A stretch of DNA of 64,000 nucleotides, from sequence record OR142618.1; one strand, written 5' to 3'. A program made the translations under genes and the position numbers. The notes under the pieces were generated by a model. The model searched no databases and had not been told where the DNA came from. It saw only the letters and a program-made list of their open reading frames with translations. Within the stretch, counting starts at the first letter, position 1; each line of letters starts with the position of its first letter. Positions 9,082 to 24,128 of this stretch are shown piece after piece.

Positions 9082-11456
9082 TATAGATTTACCCAGGATG
9101 AAAAATATACTTGTAATGATGTTAATCCCGGATCGTCATATTCCCTCGAATAATCTTGATAACCGGTTCCGTCGTTGTTATTAAAATTACTGTTTAATGT
9201 ACTAGCAACGTCAAAGTATGATAATGTTTTGTTATAGCAATATATAGACACTGCTCTAAATGCTTTAGAATAGTTAACAACATCTCCCTCTATGGCACCT
9301 ACGTGCCCCTCTGACATACATTGTGTCATAACAACATAATTTGTATTTGTTGGACGCAAAGTAGTAAAATAGAATCTATATAATCCTGTTCCTAATTTTG
9401 TTATAGATAAGTTTAAAGTGTTTATTACAAAGAAGGAACCGCCCGTAAGGTTTGTGTCTGAGAATGATGCCAGACCTTTTGGCATATCTATTTCTACTTT
9501 CCAGTCATATCCTAAATAAGTTACTAATTGGTCCCTGCTAGCAAAACGAACATAATTGTCATTGGTATTATTGTTTCTAAATGTTACTTGGGCATTTATT
9601 GACATAGGGTCTGCATTAGTGTATGTCATACTAAATGAAGATGCAGATAGATACCCGCCGTTTGCATCAGGAAGATTAGAAGGTGTATATCTTACTGCTA
9701 TTGTGTTGGCGCCCGGACTAGTTGAATTTATTTTACCGTTAAGTAAATATGAATCTACGGCAGTACCGTTCCACGCCAATGCTCCTACTTCGGCAGCGGT
9801 CGGCGGCCGTCTGTCGTGGAATGCTAAATTACCAGAACCTATATATAGATTGTCTGCTTTAAATGATATGATACTATTTGCTACTAATGGTGTATTTATT
9901 GCACCAGTATTATAGAAGACAAACTGTATTCCGTTATCTAATGTATTGTTAGTAACCATATTCATACTAACAGCAGTAGTATTATTTTGAGAATGAATAT
10001 CTGTAACAGTACCGCCTAGTATTAGACTAGTTCCATAATTGGGTTTATATGCTAATCTGAAACTATTATCATTCATTACTATTACATCTCCTGATGTAAC
10101 AGATGAAGTTATAGACGAAGTAACAAACGGTGTTTGTTTTTTAACGTAAGCTGTGCTATCTAACCCGCCTAGTAATTCTGAATCTGGAGAAGAACTATTT
10201 GATTTATCTACGAATAGATTATTATATTCTTGGGAATTGTATGTTTCGTTTTTACCATATATAGATAAATTATTTCTAGCGGCTGCCTTATTTAAAACAT
10301 CTGCTAGGTTCAGTGTTTTATCGAATGTATTTACGTTATCTACTAATCCCAGACCTATCTGTTCTTTTGTAACTTGATGAGGGTCGTTTTTATCATTAAT
10401 GTGAGCACTAAGTAAATCTAATGTGCCCTGAGTTAATGGATGCCATTTTGCTAGATTTGTAAATTCACCGGGTTCTCCTACATATACATAAAATGATCCT
10501 TGTGTCCCGGGTCCCTCTGTTTTATACCATAGTTGTCCTTTTATAGCATTTTGGGGAGGAGAAGAACTAGCAAAGTTTTCTACCATCCATATCATGGATT
10601 CACTAAATGCTTTTTCGTAACCTGCCGAATTATATCCTGGCATAGATATAGAAAGTAAGTTAGAAGAAATATAGTTATCAGGTACATTTAATCCTGGAAT
10701 CTTGTTATAGCACTTTGCAGAAAAAGATAATACCTCGAAAGTACATAAATCCTGATTACCTGATACAAATCCAAATAATGCAGATGTTTTAAAATCAGTT
10801 AGTGTATCATCGTTTAGATCTATAGTAAACACCGAGTTATCTATTATTACGTTAGAATTCCAGTCGGAACACTTAGCTGTTATTTTATTATTTTCTCTAA
10901 TTACATTAATAATTGTATATCTATTTGACCAACCGAGATACCCTGTAGATGATGTAGAAGTAGCCCCAGCAGGACTATTAATTCCTATTGTTTTACTAGA
11001 AAGAATCGTTCTAGTTTTATTGTTATCTAAAATTAGTTCCCAATTCCTTCCGGATCCGCTGCTAGATGTGTTACCTAATGACCGGACAGCAGATATATAT
11101 TTTCCTTTTTGTCCAGCAACACACAAACCTAACCTGTTATTTCTTATAGAATTGCTAGATATTTTTATTGTAATATTAAAATCACTAACTTGATCCATGT
11201 ATAACGCATAGCTATATAACGATGCTGCATTAGTTGATATAGGATCAGGAGTTCTTGTGTAAGAAAGAATAGAAGTAGCTGACCATCCTGCAGTGACGCC
11301 GCCTATTGCTTTTCCTTCCCATGCATCATACAAGTTAACTGATGTAGCTTTTGACCAATCAGAAACAACTTCTTGGTAACTAGGAAAAGAAGTTAGTTCT
11401 CTATTTTGGTAATAATTATTTGATAAACGTAATTCGTAACCCATGACAATGCTCAA
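9081..11456 (-). CDS. Tail fibre / baseplate-associated fibre, paralogue 1 (791 aa) with extra N-terminal beta-rich domain; true start may be ATG 11444
   Basis: ENFASSSPPQNAIKGQLW; NDPHQVTKEQIGLGLV; C-terminal TKLGTGLYRFYF. Confidence 0.7.
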   Translation of the reverse strand: MSIVMGYELRLSNNYYQNRELTSFPSYQEVVSDWSKATSVNLYDAWEGKAIGGVTAGWSATSILSYTRTPDPISTNAASLYSYALYMDQVSDFNITIKISSNSIRNNRLGLCVAGQKGKYISAVRSLGNTSSSGSGRNWELILDNNKTRTILSSKTIGINSPAGATSTSSTGYLGWSNRYTIINVIRENNKITAKCSDWNSNVIIDNSVFTIDLNDDTLTDFKTSALFGFVSGNQDLCTFEVLSFSAKCYNKIPGLNVPDNYISSNLLSISMPGYNSAGYEKAFSESMIWMVENFASSSPPQNAIKGQLWYKTEGPGTQGSFYVYVGEPGEFTNLAKWHPLTQGTLDLLSAHINDKNDPHQVTKEQIGLGLVDNVNTFDKTLNLADVLNKAAARNNLSIYGKNETYNSQEYNNLFVDKSNSSSPDSELLGGLDSTAYVKKQTPFVTSSITSSVTSGDVIVMNDNSFRLAYKPNYGTSLILGGTVTDIHSQNNTTAVSMNMVTNNTLDNGIQFVFYNTGAINTPLVANSIISFKADNLYIGSGNLAFHDRRPPTAAEVGALAWNGTAVDSYLLNGKINSTSPGANTIAVRYTPSNLPDANGGYLSASSFSMTYTNADPMSINAQVTFRNNNTNDNYVRFASRDQLVTYLGYDWKVEIDMPKGLASFSDTNLTGGSFFVINTLNLSITKLGTGLYRFYFTTLRPTNTNYVVMTQCMSEGHVGAIEGDVVNYSKAFRAVSIYCYNKTLSYFDVASTLNSNFNNNDGTGYQDYSREYDDPGLTSLQVYFSSWVNL

Positions 11457-11468
11457 TATTCTTTATGA

Positions 11469-11476
11469 TATTTATC
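11469..11476 (-). promoter_or_regulatory. Putative late promoter GATAAATA for the fibre operon
   Basis: tatttatc on + strand, just upstream of the 791-aa gene. Confidence 0.6.
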
Positions 11477-11539
11477 ATAGTAATTTTAGGTAAATTTATG
11501 AAATTATATTTATTTTCTTTTATAAAACATAAAATATAG

Positions 11540-11568
11540 TTGTTTAATTTAACTGGGTGTAATATAAT
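11540..11568 (+). promoter_or_regulatory. sigma70-like promoter upstream of the structured RNA candidate
   Basis: TTGTTT-N17-TATAAT. Confidence 0.55.
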
Positions 11569-11574
11569 TTGTAG

Positions 11575-11845
11575 TGTATGCAATACATTTGCATATATAC
11601 CAAGCACTGTATGGTGAGTTGCATACAGCGATGGGCAATCGTAGTGCCGACATTGATCTAGTATGATCTGAAATAGGTCCCTTACGCCGAGGTAAGGCTA
11701 TCTGGCACGGATAGTAGTGGATGTGTATGTTCGAAATAACGATATCATATTTTAGACATACGCCGCCGTCAGCATTTTTAGTTTGCAACTGCTGATATCT
11801 TTAAGTTTTGTTGATGGCCGGGGGTGGTGCCCAGTGCATTTTTAT
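11575..11845 (+). ncRNA. Candidate structured non-coding RNA, family unassigned
   Basis: About 45% GC over 11601-11840 (counted by hand) within very AT-rich flanks; at least seven stems; G-U pairs favour the + strand; long-range pairing TGGGCA 11632-37 / TGCCCA 11828-33. Confidence 0.65.
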
Positions 11846-12039
11846 TGTAGAGTTAATGTGTAAAAGAAATAAATGTGCTTAAAGACGAGGTTCTTTTCTA
11901 AAACTGTTTCTAAAAATAATTGCGTTAAAACCTTGGGTTTAATTAATGTATTATATATGCTATATAATTAGCCCTACATAAACATGTATGTTTAACTTGT
12001 TTAGTTAACAATAAAATATGCAAATTAAGGAATTAACTG

Positions 12040-12207
12040 ATGACCAAATTTAATAAAAAATCGTTAGATACATATGAAGATAGAGAAGATTATAGAGATG
12101 AAGAAACTGGTGACAGGTTAAATAATAAGAAATCTGAACCTAAAAAAAATAATACTGATTATAAGCCGTTTGGTAAAATTACCAACCGCTATAATAATGA
12201 TAATTAA
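12040..12207 (+). CDS. Small charged hypothetical protein (55 aa), absent from the ORF track
   Basis: AAGGA RBS 8 nt upstream; MTKFNKKSLDTYEDREDYRDEETGDRLNNKK...NDN*. Confidence 0.5.
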   Translation: MTKFNKKSLDTYEDREDYRDEETGDRLNNKKSEPKKNNTDYKPFGKITNRYNNDN

Positions 12208-12235
12208 ATAGTAAATATTATTATCATTTACTACG

Positions 12236-12655
12236 GTGATAATAATGATAGAAACTATTTTAACCTCGAGAGTATTTGCTTATGTAGTTTGCATAGGTAT
12301 AATATCGTTAGCAATAACGCTCTCATATCAAAAATATCAAAAGCTTATTAGTGTAAATAAATCTCTTGAACAATCTATAGAAACGTTAACTAATGATAAT
12401 AATTCATTGCAGTTAACTATTTCTGAACAAAATAAAAAGATTGAAACATATATTCAACTTAGATTATATGAAGAATCTATAGCAAAACAAAAAGCAGAAT
12501 CACATGCTGCTTTAGAAAAACAATTACAAGATACTAAATCTCAGTTAAATGAATTAATAGAACGTAGAAAGAATGAGGCACCAAATGATCAAAGTGTGTT
12601 ATGCTCTACTGTCAGGATTGATCCTGCTTTACGCAACTGGATGCTCGCAAACTAA
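12236..12655 (+). CDS. i-spanin (Rz-like)
   Basis: N-terminal TM helix plus long coiled coil; overlaps a lipoprotein gene; adjacent to holin and endolysin. Confidence 0.75.
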   Translation: MIIMIETILTSRVFAYVVCIGIISLAITLSYQKYQKLISVNKSLEQSIETLTNDNNSLQLTISEQNKKIETYIQLRLYEESIAKQKAESHAALEKQLQDTKSQLNELIERRKNEAPNDQSVLCSTVRIDPALRNWMLAN

Positions 12656-12902
12656 ACCAGTTAAGTCTGTAGTGATAGAAAAGGAAATAGTTCCTGTTCT
12701 TCCGCCAGATTCTCTTATAGTATATTGTTACGAAAATGAAAATCCCGATACGTATGGCGAAGCGGTAGGTTCGGTTAAAAAACTAAAATCTATAATTAAA
12801 AATTCTTGTAATAAAAATATGAAAGATATAGAACTTTGGAAATCTGAAGTTAAAAAACTATATCCTACTGCGAATGACTTAGAAACAAAAAAGCAGCCTT
12901 AA
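12573..12902 (+). CDS. o-spanin (Rz1-like) lipoprotein
   Basis: Signal peptide with lipobox LLYATG-C; Pro-rich PVLPPDS; overlaps the 3' end of the i-spanin. Confidence 0.75.
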   Translation: MRHQMIKVCYALLSGLILLYATGCSQTKPVKSVVIEKEIVPVLPPDSLIVYCYENENPDTYGEAVGSVKKLKSIIKNSCNKNMKDIELWKSEVKKLYPTANDLETKKQP

Positions 12903-12913: not shown

Positions 12914-13162
12914 ATTGTCCGAGTCGCATGGGTTTATTTTATCTTTTATATTCTGTTTTATATAACTTCCTGCAATACCTAGTATACTAAACAAACATAC
13001 TAATCCTATAAATACGTGAGTTTCTATCAAAGAACTAAATCCAATAATTGCTGGAACACCGTATTGTGCAATAGCCATTAATAAATTCACTACATGGAAA
13101 ATATAAGAATATCTTTTATATATTTTAGTCCAATTATCTGTTAATTTAAGTTTCCTAAACAT
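12899..13162 (-). CDS. Putative holin
   Basis: 87 aa, two predicted TM segments, basic termini, overlaps the endolysin stop. Confidence 0.65.
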   Translation of the reverse strand: MFRKLKLTDNWTKIYKRYSYIFHVVNLLMAIAQYGVPAIIGFSSLIETHVFIGLVCLFSILGIAGSYIKQNIKDKINPCDSDNKKAA

Positions 13163-13656
13163 ACATTCCTCTCTTCAGTTCTTCGTTTTACTAATCCTTT
13201 TAAAACAACTCCTCCTGCTTTAGTCCATTTTAGCAATTCGTTGCATGCTCCTACTTTATCGCCTGCATTTAATTTTCTAAGCATTGTGGATTGATTTCCA
13301 TTTTTTAATGTGACAAATCCGTCTTTAACCCCTTTTTTCCCTGGTCCTACGTTATATAAGAACGAAAGAAACGCAGCATGTTCGTATGGCGTTAATTCTA
13401 CCTTTACTACATTTGTTAAGATTTTATTATGTTCTAAAAGATCTTTTGCTAATTGATCCAAACATTGGCTGTCTGTAAATTGTTGTCCTTTTTTTAGCTC
13501 AGGTCCAGTGTGACCGTAGCAAGATGTTAAAATTCCTACTGGATCTACATATACCTTGTTTACTTTACCTTCAAACGGAGCCAATAGTGCTCCTCCTAGT
13601 GCAATTGCACCGGATAATCCCATTGCAATTAATTTTTTTCTAATATTATTATCCAT
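13141..13656 (-). CDS. SAR endolysin (GH24 lysozyme)
   Basis: Gly/Ala-rich N-terminal SAR (IAMGLSGAIALGGALL) followed by the E-x8-D-x5-T triad (FEGKVNKVYVDPVGILT); GLVKRRTEER. Confidence 0.92.
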   Translation of the reverse strand: MDNNIRKKLIAMGLSGAIALGGALLAPFEGKVNKVYVDPVGILTSCYGHTGPELKKGQQFTDSQCLDQLAKDLLEHNKILTNVVKVELTPYEHAAFLSFLYNVGPGKKGVKDGFVTLKNGNQSTMLRKLNAGDKVGACNELLKWTKAGGVVLKGLVKRRTEERNVCLGNLN

Positions 13657-23992: not shown

Positions 23993-24107
23993 CCCTTAGG
24001 ACCGCCAAATGTTTTGGCTTAAGGCGCACCGGTGCTGTATCGGAGCTTAGTGATTCGCTACCACAAAAGCATAAGCAGCTAGGAGACTTAAAACGTCTCC
24101 TATTTTT
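23992..24107 (+). ncRNA. Candidate structured RNA ending in an intrinsic terminator
   Basis: Stems CCTTAG/TTAAGG, GCCAAA/TTTGGC, CCGGT/ATCGG, GCTTA/TAAGC; terminator TAGGAGAC/GTCTCCTA + T5. Confidence 0.55.
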
Positions 24108-24128
24108 ATATATACAGGAGTAAAGTAT

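What the first reader, a model, noticed from the sequence alone, without database searches (positions are those of the whole stretch)
11540..11845. Promoter-bearing ~270-nt highly structured intergenic RNA candidate of unknown family
Seen: about 45% GC (hand count, 11601-11840) within very AT-rich flanks, downstream of TTGTTT-N17-TATAAT. Stems: TATGCAA/TTGCATA (11577-95), CTGTATG/CATACAG (11607-28), GATCT/AGGTC (11665-79), CCTTAC/GTAAGG (11680-97), CTATC/GATAG (11698-714), GTGTATGTT/GACATACGC (11723-63), GTCAGCA/TGCTGAT (11768-96) and long-range TGGGCA/TGCCCA. The CTATC/GATAG loop TGGCAC can pair with GTGCCG at 11644-49, a possible pseudoknot. Repeated G-U pairs point to the + strand. I could not find tRNA, tmRNA, RNase P or group II hallmarks. 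Inference: a phage ncRNA (decoy, ribozyme or scaffold) between the tail-fibre and lysis modules.
Basis: partly seen in the sequence, partly recalled or inferred. Interest (0 to 1): 0.8.

Follow-up and report, generated by a model that had tools for sequence, protein, structure and literature searches.

The report
Orphan structured RNA in jumbo phage
This conserved, GC-rich, foldable stretch in the longest gene-free gap of a Pseudomonas jumbo phage is the already annotated but never explained 'ncRNA003' of phage PA5oct, and it has no relatives outside that one phage genus.

Summary
The window is Pseudomonas phage Callisto (genus Wroclawvirus, PA5oct-like jumbo phage). The flagged stretch matches, at 99% identity, the RNA-seq-based feature 'ncRNA003, putative lncRNA' of PA5oct (Lood et al. 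2020). Its existence as a + strand transcript is therefore already known.

- a 45% GC island in a 595-nt intergenic gap
- a perfect -10 hexamer with a weak -35
- every listed stem

Folding beats shuffles only moderately (z -2.7). About 1% of windows in this genome do as well.

The stronger evidence is evolutionary. In 12-16 genomes the core varies like first and second codon positions: 1% of sites, and 0 of 147 in the centre. Third codon positions vary at 7% and the spacer just downstream at 16%. The constraint ends at the U tract (11846). All 8 natural substitutions spare the predicted helices.

No two-sided covariation exists. There is no Rfam, tRNA or tmRNA hit and no homologue outside the genus.

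A minus-strand reading frame that five GenBank records annotate is a live but weaker rival.

Best reading: a genus-specific structured + strand RNA of about 265 nt, mechanism unknown. Novelty is low and interest moderate.

The parts
11540..11568 (+). Sigma-70-like promoter P1: -35 TTGTTT, 17-nt spacer, -10 TATAAT
   Evidence: Read directly. Both hexamers are invariant in 16 genomes, and two of the three substitutions in the upstream intergenic stretch fall in the spacer between them. The PA5oct RNA-seq feature starts 19 nt after the -10, at window 11587. The -35 is too weak for the scanner's threshold.
11574..11598 (+). 5' hairpin H0 (10 bp, 5-nt loop) at or near the transcript start
   Evidence: Pair probability 0.90-0.97. 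z -2.82. The only substitution lies in the loop.
11604..11837 (+). GC-rich multi-helix core. H1 11607-11628; H2 11629-11655 (uncertain); long arm H3 11656-11722; H4 11723-11763; H5 11765-11818; small 3' hairpin 11819-11833; closing helix 11604-07/11834-37 (uncertain)
   Evidence: MFE and ensemble. Sub-domain z is -2.5 to -3.8 on + and +0.5 to -1.1 on -. 2 of 199 sites vary in 11604-11802 and 0 of 147 in 11621-11767, against 7% at third codon positions. Pair 11768-11815 is G-U in most genomes, G-C in three and A-U in one.
11838..11846 (+). U-rich tract (AUUUUUAUU) directly after the closing helix; likely 3' end or domain boundary
   Evidence: Invariant in 16 genomes, and variability starts at 11847. 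It is not a canonical intrinsic terminator by the scanner. The published PA5oct ncRNA003 ends about 45 nt further on, at window 11890.
11847..12039 (+). AT-rich, poorly constrained spacer with a second promoter-like -10 (TATAAT 11963-68) and the ribosome-binding site of the next gene
   Evidence: 16% variable columns, with a 12-nt deletion and four 1-nt indels among 16 genomes. The block 11950-11970 that holds the -10 is invariant.
12040..12207 (+). 55-aa gene downstream (PA5oct gp169), overlapped by the GenBank version of the ncRNA003 feature
   Evidence: Annotated. All 4 substitutions in the 10 GenBank genomes are at codon position 3.
11549..11839 (-). Rival: minus-strand reading frame across the whole core. 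It is interrupted by one in-frame stop in 13 of 16 genomes and uninterrupted in 3. Five GenBank records annotate it as a 79-aa (TTG start) or 96-aa hypothetical protein.
   Evidence: GC3 is 0.37-0.41, against 0.15-0.30 in all 36 neighbouring genes, and the codon log-odds score lies below every real gene. No Pfam or PHROG hit. No true homologue among 1.84 billion representatives. AlphaFold pLDDT 44.8.

Best explanation
The region encodes a genus-specific, structured RNA on the + strand, the orthologue of PA5oct ncRNA003.

Proposed course:
- The host sigma-70 RNA polymerase starts at about 11575 from promoter P1.
- The RNA opens with a protective 5' hairpin.
- It then folds into a junction of four or five helices (11604-11837).
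- It ends, or at least stops being functional, at the U tract 11838-11846.

It most likely works through its folded shape, by binding a phage or host protein or by acting on the polymerase or transcript that carries it. Long antisense pairing is less likely. Within this reading I put a stand-alone RNA of about 265 nt ahead of a 5' leader of the 55-aa gene operon, at roughly 0.45 against 0.25.

Shown: + strand transcription in PA5oct; sequence constraint with a sharp 3' boundary; helix-sparing substitutions; strand-asymmetric folding.
Inferred: the transcription start; the 3' end; every helix in detail; the whole mode of action.
For: 1. 99.1-100% identity to ten other Wroclawvirus genomes. PA5oct carries 'ncRNA003, putative lncRNA, based on RNA-Seq' on the + strand at the equivalent of 11587-11890 in the paper, or 11587-12191 in GenBank.
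2. The 595-nt gap is four times longer than any other intergenic gap in the first 32 kb, and it holds a 100-nt stretch of 50% GC.
3. Share of variable sites in 12 genomes: core 1.0% and centre 0 of 147, against 7.0% at third codon positions (p=0.0005 and 0.0001) and 16% in the adjacent spacer. There are no indels in the RNA and several in the spacer.
4. All 8 natural substitutions leave the MFE unchanged or lower it, with a mean of -0.94 kcal/mol. A null of the same base changes at random positions gives +0.68 (p=0.004). The G-U pair 11768-11815 becomes G-C in one lineage and A-U in another.
5. Folding is better than shuffles on + (z -2.69; sub-domains -2.5 to -3.8) and not on - for the same sub-domains.
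6. Flat GC1/GC2/GC3 (0.41/0.46/0.41) shows no coding periodicity.
7. The next gene has its own conserved -10 element.
Against: - No pair shows changes on both sides, because only 8 substitutions exist.
- The helix-sparing test is also significant on the minus strand (p=0.012). It supports the helices, not the strand. It also assumes that the majority base is ancestral, and four of the eight changes are linked in one lineage.
- The energy excess is matched by about 1% of windows in the same genome.
- There is no canonical terminator.
- The GenBank feature runs on into the 55-aa gene.
- Abundance is low, 0.01-0.05% of phage reads, which is below the per-feature average.
- Substitutions inside the minus-strand frame favour its third codon positions, 4 of 5.
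- No homologue outside the genus means no independent test.
Confidence: 0.65

Rival explanations
1. It is a cis-acting 5' leader. Transcription from P1 reads through into the 55-aa gene and the two structural genes after it. The folded domain plus U tract acts as a regulated pause or attenuator for that small operon.
For: The GenBank ncRNA003 feature spans 604 nt and overlaps the 55-aa CDS. No canonical terminator lies between 11300 and 12400. Low abundance fits a leader better than a stoichiometric RNA. The 3' strand 11828-37 can pair with either 11604-09 or 11632-37, and GUCAGCA can pair with either 11790-96 or 11809-15, so a switch is conceivable.
Against: The paper gives 304 nt, not 604. 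A 190-nt spacer that is the least constrained sequence of the region, with indels, separates the domain from the gene. The gene has its own invariant -10 block. The 10-nt complement next to its ribosome-binding site is broken in the MIJ3 lineage.
Confidence: 0.25
2. It is a small protein-coding gene, or a decaying one, on the minus strand (11549-11839). That would make it the first gene of the minus-strand structural operon, and the RNA fold would be incidental.
For: Five submitters annotate a 79-aa or 96-aa ORF. Three of 16 genomes have the full ATG-started frame uninterrupted. In-frame substitutions are 6 synonymous, 3 non-synonymous and 1 stop/sense, and 4 of 5 in the 79-codon part are at position 3 (p about 0.05). 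The rates by codon position resemble those of real genes.
Against: One in-frame stop in 13 of 16 genomes. No Shine-Dalgarno sequence before either start (sequence). GC3 and GC2 lie outside the range of all 36 neighbouring genes, and the codon log-odds is -0.02 to -0.09 against >=0.15. Another minus frame is equally poor in stops. No Pfam, PHROG or library homologue; the one 'hit' is a weak 23-bit match repeated 16 times. No confident fold. The RNA-seq feature is on the other strand, and the PA5oct authors judged that the region has no plausible ORF.
Confidence: 0.12
3. It is a DNA-level element. One example would be a replication origin where a G-rich transcript from P1 forms a persistent hybrid next to an AT-rich unwinding region. 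Another would be a protein-binding regulatory site between divergent operons.
For: It is the largest gap, sits at a switch of gene orientation, and has AT-rich flanks of 20-25% GC. The transcript is G-rich (GC skew +0.12 to +0.28) with a G5 run near its 3' end. The ATGCAA/TTGCAT motif recurs four times.
Against: No iterons or tandem repeats in the core. The cumulative skew simply follows gene orientation. Nothing here tests replication. Strand-asymmetric folding and G-U pairs point to RNA.
Confidence: 0.05

Closest known systems
PA5oct ncRNA003 ('putative lncRNA', EST35_0168; Lood et al. 2020, PMC7318152)
   Same: Same locus, same strand, 99.1% identical sequence, same flanking genes.
   Different: Nothing material. 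The paper gives only coordinates and read shares. The structure, constraint and rival ORF analyses are added here. The paper (304 nt) and GenBank (604 nt) disagree on the 3' end.
Large phage- or prophage-associated structured RNAs of unknown function (ROOL, GOLLD), which assemble into homo-oligomers (PMC12286853, seen)
   Same: Phage-borne, multi-helix, no known function. The H4 apical loop carries a 6-nt palindrome that could in principle mediate loop-loop contacts.
   Different: No Rfam match at any threshold. About 265 nt rather than roughly 600-800 (sizes from my own knowledge). Not next to tRNA genes. Restricted to one genus. Oligomerisation is untested.
phi29 packaging RNA (pRNA)
   Same: A phage-encoded structured RNA beside structural genes, in which loop-loop pairing matters (established knowledge).
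   Different: No Rfam match. A different phage lineage. Low abundance. No evidence of any link to packaging.
Promoter-proximal regulatory RNAs (HK022 put-type antitermination elements, leader attenuators, riboswitches)
   Same: A folded RNA just downstream of a promoter and upstream of an operon, followed by a U tract.
   Different: Several times larger. No family match. A long unconstrained spacer and a second promoter-like element lie before the gene.

Membership tests
PA5oct ncRNA003 (orthologue) | Same sequence, strand and genomic position as the RNA-seq-defined feature | tested here: met
   99.1% identity over 651 nt. The feature at record 103065-103368/103668 maps to window 11587-11890/12191, on the + strand.
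Any Rfam 15 family (4227 models, including group I/II introns, RNase P, tmRNA, 6S, riboswitches, small ribozymes, ROOL, GOLLD, OLE, pRNA) | Covariance-model score at gathering threshold, or at least E<=10 | tested here: not met
   0 matches in the whole window at gathering threshold. 0 matches in 11400-12050 at E<=10.
tRNA / tmRNA | ARAGORN detection | tested here: not met
   0 genes in the window.
Structured ncRNA (generic) | Base pairs kept through compensatory changes on both sides | tested here: inconclusive
   0 of 88 pairs have changes on both sides. One pair shows G-U to G-C and G-U to A-U. Only 8 substitutions exist in 16 genomes.
Structured ncRNA (generic) | Folding energy below dinucleotide shuffles and below the genomic background | tested here: inconclusive
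   z -2.69 with 4 of 200 shuffles as good. About 1% of windows in the same genome reach a similar GC-corrected excess.
Structured ncRNA (generic) | Purifying selection on a non-coding sequence, with substitutions that spare the helices | tested here: met
   Core 1.0% variable against 7.0% at codon position 3 and 16% in the spacer. 8 of 8 substitutions have ddMFE<=0, p=0.004. The minus strand also passes this test.
Sigma-70 promoter | Two hexamers close to consensus at 16-18 nt spacing, with a transcript start downstream | tested here: inconclusive
   -10 matches 6 of 6, -35 matches 3 of 6, spacer 17 nt. This is below the scanner's threshold, and such matches are at chance level in this genome. 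The hexamers are invariant while the spacer varies. The RNA-seq start lies 19 nt downstream.
Intrinsic terminator | GC-rich hairpin with a 3-8 nt loop, followed within 2 nt by a U run | tested here: not met
   No site in 11300-12400. The U tract follows a long-range closing helix instead.
Protein-coding gene (minus strand 11549-11839) | Uninterrupted frame, native codon usage, ribosome-binding site, homologues | tested here: not met
   One stop in 13 of 16 genomes. GC3 and codon log-odds lie outside the range of all 36 neighbouring genes. No homologues and no confident fold. The substitution pattern alone is compatible with coding (p about 0.05).

The most novel reading that the evidence does not exclude
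The RNA founds a new class of phage structured RNA that acts through its three-dimensional fold. It could be a self-associating or protein-scaffolding RNA that uses the palindromic H4 loop (11739-11747) and its 7-nt complement in the H5 internal loop (11793-11799). It could instead be a new ligand- or protein-responsive switch that controls the divergent structural and lysis operons of Wroclawviruses.
Probability: 0.12. Interest if true: 0.65.

Novelty: already known. Interest (0 to 1): 0.33.

Why it matters
Jumbo phages of the PA5oct group are candidates for phage therapy, yet most of their genome is unexplained. A non-coding stretch that evolves as slowly as protein-coding positions and sits between structural and lysis genes must do something. 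It would be one of very few phage RNAs of this size without a known family.

The practical gains here are smaller:
- The finding is tied to a published transcript.
- It now has a testable secondary-structure model and clear boundaries.
- Five GenBank records probably carry a spurious protein annotation on the opposite strand.
- The paper and the database record disagree on the RNA's 3' end.

Tried and rejected
Homologue searches that found nothing useful:
- Rfam at gathering threshold and at E<=10 gave nothing. ARAGORN gave nothing.
- blastn (words of 11) against 50,697 phage records found only 11 Wroclawvirus records.
- The synteny route is closed. The 787-aa and 136-aa neighbours have no divergent relatives in phage records, IMG/VR or the 5.8-billion protein set. 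The family holds a single genus.
- Exact probes from the core found nothing in IMG/VR or in two metagenome scans. An 18-mer in 185,579 genomes gave 5 hits with no similarity beyond 18-21 nt.
- A covariance model of H3+H4 found no paralogue in the window or in the PA5oct ncRNA001, 002 and 004 loci. nhmmer and short-word blastn found no paralogue and no convincing antisense target in the window.

Other dead ends:
- Rfam on the other three PA5oct ncRNA loci gave only sub-threshold miRNA-like chance hits.
- The papers that cite PA5oct add nothing on ncRNA003. No supplementary files were held. The 2018 preprint numbers its ncRNAs differently, so its remark on a very abundant 'ncRNA003' was not used.

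Ideas considered and set aside:
- Group I intron: intergenic position and no Rfam hit.
- Diversity-generating retroelement template: no repeat of the region.
- Type III antitoxin: no tandem repeats.
- RsmA sponge: only two GGA motifs, both in stems.
- Replication origin: nothing beyond context.

Method note: the null for the helix-sparing test used every single-base change of the 273-nt region in silico. A table of energy change per position and base was saved in the scratch folder, and only summary statistics were printed.

Full report
**Identity of the window.** The region 11400-12050 is 100% identical to Pseudomonas phage Callisto (OR142618.1), at the same coordinates. It is 97.7-99.8% identical to ten other records, all Wroclawvirus jumbo phages of P. 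aeruginosa (PA5oct, MIJ3, Paride, Ettore, Deifobo, Cassandra, PAC2, phi30-2, phi30-3). Nothing else matches among 50,697 phage records. The family Arenbergviridae holds only this genus.

**It is already annotated.** In PA5oct (MK797984) the match carries an ncRNA feature on the + strand, 'putative lncRNA; ncRNA003; annotation based on RNA-Seq data'. Lood et al. 2020 (PMC7318152, Table 1) list ncRNA003 at 103065-103368 (+). It takes 0.01, 0.05 and 0.03% of phage reads at 5, 15 and 25 min. [quoted passage not shown] In window coordinates that is 11587-11890. The GenBank feature ends at 103668 (window 12191) and overlaps the 55-aa CDS, so the paper and the record disagree by 300 nt. Its read share is well below the average per annotated feature. 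No later paper I could search says anything more about it.

**Check of the observation.** The sequence facts hold:
- GC is 0.45 for 11604-11843, among the highest of any 240-nt window in the 64 kb, with flanks of 0.20-0.31.
- The gap 11445-12039 is 595 nt. The next largest gap in the first 32 kb is 150 nt.
- TTGTTT-N17-TATAAT is at 11540-11568.

The thermodynamic ensemble prefers a somewhat different fold. It has these parts:
- a 5' hairpin, 11574-11598
- H1, 11607-11628
- a less certain H2, 11629-11655
- H4, 11723-11763
- a small 3' hairpin
- a weak closing helix next to the U tract

H0, H1, H3, H4 and H5 keep pair probabilities of 0.85-1.0 in four of the five transcript boundaries tried. With a start at 11587, which removes half of H0, H1 falls to 0.51.

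**Is the fold more than chance?** The whole RNA has z -2.69 on the + strand and -2.01 on the - strand. Sub-domains give -2.5 to -3.8 on + and +0.5 to -1.1 on -, although their borders were chosen after folding. In my scan of the whole window, a GC-corrected excess like that of the best-phased window is reached by about 1% of windows, mostly inside genes. The energy signal is real but modest.

**Evolutionary evidence.** I aligned the 10 GenBank genomes and then added six assemblies from ENA and Logan, found through the identical 55-aa protein. In a 3.2-kb alignment of 12 genomes the share of variable sites is as follows:

| Region | Variable sites |
|---|---|
| Codon position 1, five flanking genes | 1.4% |
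| Codon position 2 | 0.9% |
| Codon position 3 | 7.0% (54 of 775) |
| RNA 11574-11846 | 2.9% (8 of 273) |
| Core 11604-11802 | 1.0% (2 of 199; p=0.0005 against position 3) |
| Centre 11621-11767 | 0 of 147 |
| Spacer 11847-12039 | 16%, with a 12-nt deletion and four 1-nt indels across the 16 genomes |

The change from constrained to free sequence falls exactly after the U tract (11846). The two promoter hexamers are invariant, while the spacer between them varies at two sites.

**Where the eight substitutions fall.** One is in the H0 loop and one in the H1 loop. Two are the partners of the single G-U pair 11768-11815, which becomes A-U in PAC2 and G-C in MIJ3 and two assemblies. One is in the unpaired interior of H5. 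Three are in the small 3' hairpin, where two of them each add a pair in the MIJ3 lineage.

All eight leave the MFE unchanged or lower it, with a mean of -0.94 kcal/mol. The same base changes placed at random positions give +0.68 (p=0.004).

Caveats on this test:
- The same test on the minus strand gives p=0.012. It therefore supports the helices, not the strand.
- It assumes the majority base is ancestral.
- Four of the changes are linked in one lineage.
- No pair shows a change on both sides.

The strand assignment rests on the PA5oct RNA-seq, the 15 G-U pairs and the energy asymmetry.

**No relatives elsewhere.** Rfam and ARAGORN are negative. The flanking proteins have no divergent homologues in any collection, so syntenic comparison is impossible. 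Exact probes from the core find nothing in IMG/VR or JGI metagenomes, and only chance 18-mers in bacterial genomes. A covariance model of H3+H4 finds no paralogue in the window or at the other three PA5oct ncRNA loci. This is an orphan confined to one genus.

On the minus strand one frame runs across the whole core (11549-11839). Five GenBank records annotate it as a hypothetical protein of 79 aa (TTG start) or 96 aa.

Evidence for the frame:
- It is uninterrupted in 3 of 16 genomes.
- In-frame substitutions are 6 synonymous, 3 non-synonymous and 1 stop/sense. This is a marginal excess of synonymous change (p about 0.05).

Evidence against the frame:
- It carries one in-frame stop in the other 13 genomes.
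- GC1/GC2/GC3 is flat at 0.41/0.46/0.41, where all 36 neighbouring genes have GC3 of 0.15-0.30.
- The codon log-odds is below every real gene.
- A second minus frame is equally poor in stops.
- There is no Shine-Dalgarno sequence.
- There is no Pfam or PHROG family.
- Among 1.84 billion representatives the only non-self 'hit' is a weak 23-bit match repeated 16 times in a tandem-repeat protein.
- The single-sequence AlphaFold model is unconfident, pLDDT 44.8.
- The transcript seen in PA5oct is on the other strand.

I rate this rival at about 0.12.

**How it most likely works.** The evidence supports a functional + strand RNA element (0.65). Within that reading, four things favour a stand-alone RNA of about 265 nt (about 0.45): the sharp constraint boundary at the U tract, the free-evolving spacer, the invariant -10 block in front of the 55-aa gene, and the 304-nt length in the paper. 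Three things keep a cis-acting leader or attenuator alive (about 0.25): the lack of a canonical terminator, the 604-nt GenBank feature, and the low abundance.

Low abundance argues against a stoichiometric decoy or sponge. The lack of any long complement elsewhere in the window argues against classical antisense action. I therefore favour action through the folded shape, either by protein binding or by an effect on the transcribing polymerase, but that is inference only.

Two candidate tertiary contacts exist and neither is tested. The other is a 7-nt complement between the palindrome-bearing H4 loop (11741-47) and the H5 interior (11793-99). A replication-origin or other DNA-level role has only contextual support.

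**Verdict.** The feature is real and probably functional, but it is not new. It is PA5oct ncRNA003 in a sister phage. What is added here:
- a structure model
- evidence of selection with clear boundaries
- the restriction to one genus
- the weakness of the competing ORF annotation
- the conflict between paper and GenBank coordinates

Function remains open and cannot be resolved with so little sequence diversity.

- The output and my notebook entry 3 record where the in-frame stop of the minus-strand frame lies and which codon replaces it in three genomes.

Noticed in passing
window 12040-12207: The 55-aa, highly charged ORF is very likely a real gene. In the 10 GenBank genomes all 4 substitutions are at codon position 3. 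The identical protein is found on 24 or more contigs.
   Followed up: partly
PA5oct MK797984 103065-103368 / 103668 (window 11587-11890 / 12191): The paper's Table 1 and the GenBank and RefSeq feature disagree by 300 nt on the 3' end of ncRNA003. The GenBank version overlaps the gp169 CDS.
   Followed up: partly
window 11549-11839, minus strand: Cassandra, Deifobo, Paride, PAC2 and Ettore annotate a hypothetical protein here (79 or 96 aa). Callisto, PA5oct, MIJ3, phi30-2 and phi30-3 do not. Codon usage suggests the annotation is spurious.
   Followed up: yes
window 11895-11918; locus L024 (Logan SRR24309835): A 12-nt unit (TTTCTAAAACTG) is present twice in tandem in the spacer. One assembly lacks one copy. 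The spacer also has four 1-nt indels among 16 genomes.
   Followed up: partly
window 11587-11596 and 12016-12025: A perfect 10-nt complement links the 3' arm of the 5' hairpin and the stretch just 5' of the ribosome-binding site of the 55-aa gene. MIJ3 and one assembly carry a substitution in the downstream partner, so it is not conserved.
   Followed up: partly
window 11739-11747 and 11793-11799: The 9-nt apical loop of H4 holds the palindrome GATATC. A second GATATC sits in the unpaired interior of H5, giving 7 nt of loop-loop complementarity within one molecule or between two. Both sites are invariant. By rough estimate the chance expectation is not negligible.
   Followed up: no
window 12594-12902 / 12672-12902: Gene calls differ: a 102-105-aa ORF overlapping the 136-aa gene, or the 76-aa protein that PA5oct reports as detected in virions. 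The long version carries a weak Pfam LysC (PF23793) mark, and the lysozyme gene lies next door at 13141-13656.
   Followed up: no
window 23993-24128: This is the only other GC-rich gap (43% GC) in the first 32 kb. It holds an ordinary hairpin-plus-U-run terminator and folds no better than shuffles (z -0.5 on +, -1.35 on -).
   Followed up: yes
loci L011-L013 (PA5oct ncRNA001, 002, 004): The other three PA5oct ncRNAs match no Rfam family, only sub-threshold miRNA-like chance hits next to ncRNA001. They share nothing with ncRNA003 by sequence or by the H3+H4 model.
   Followed up: partly
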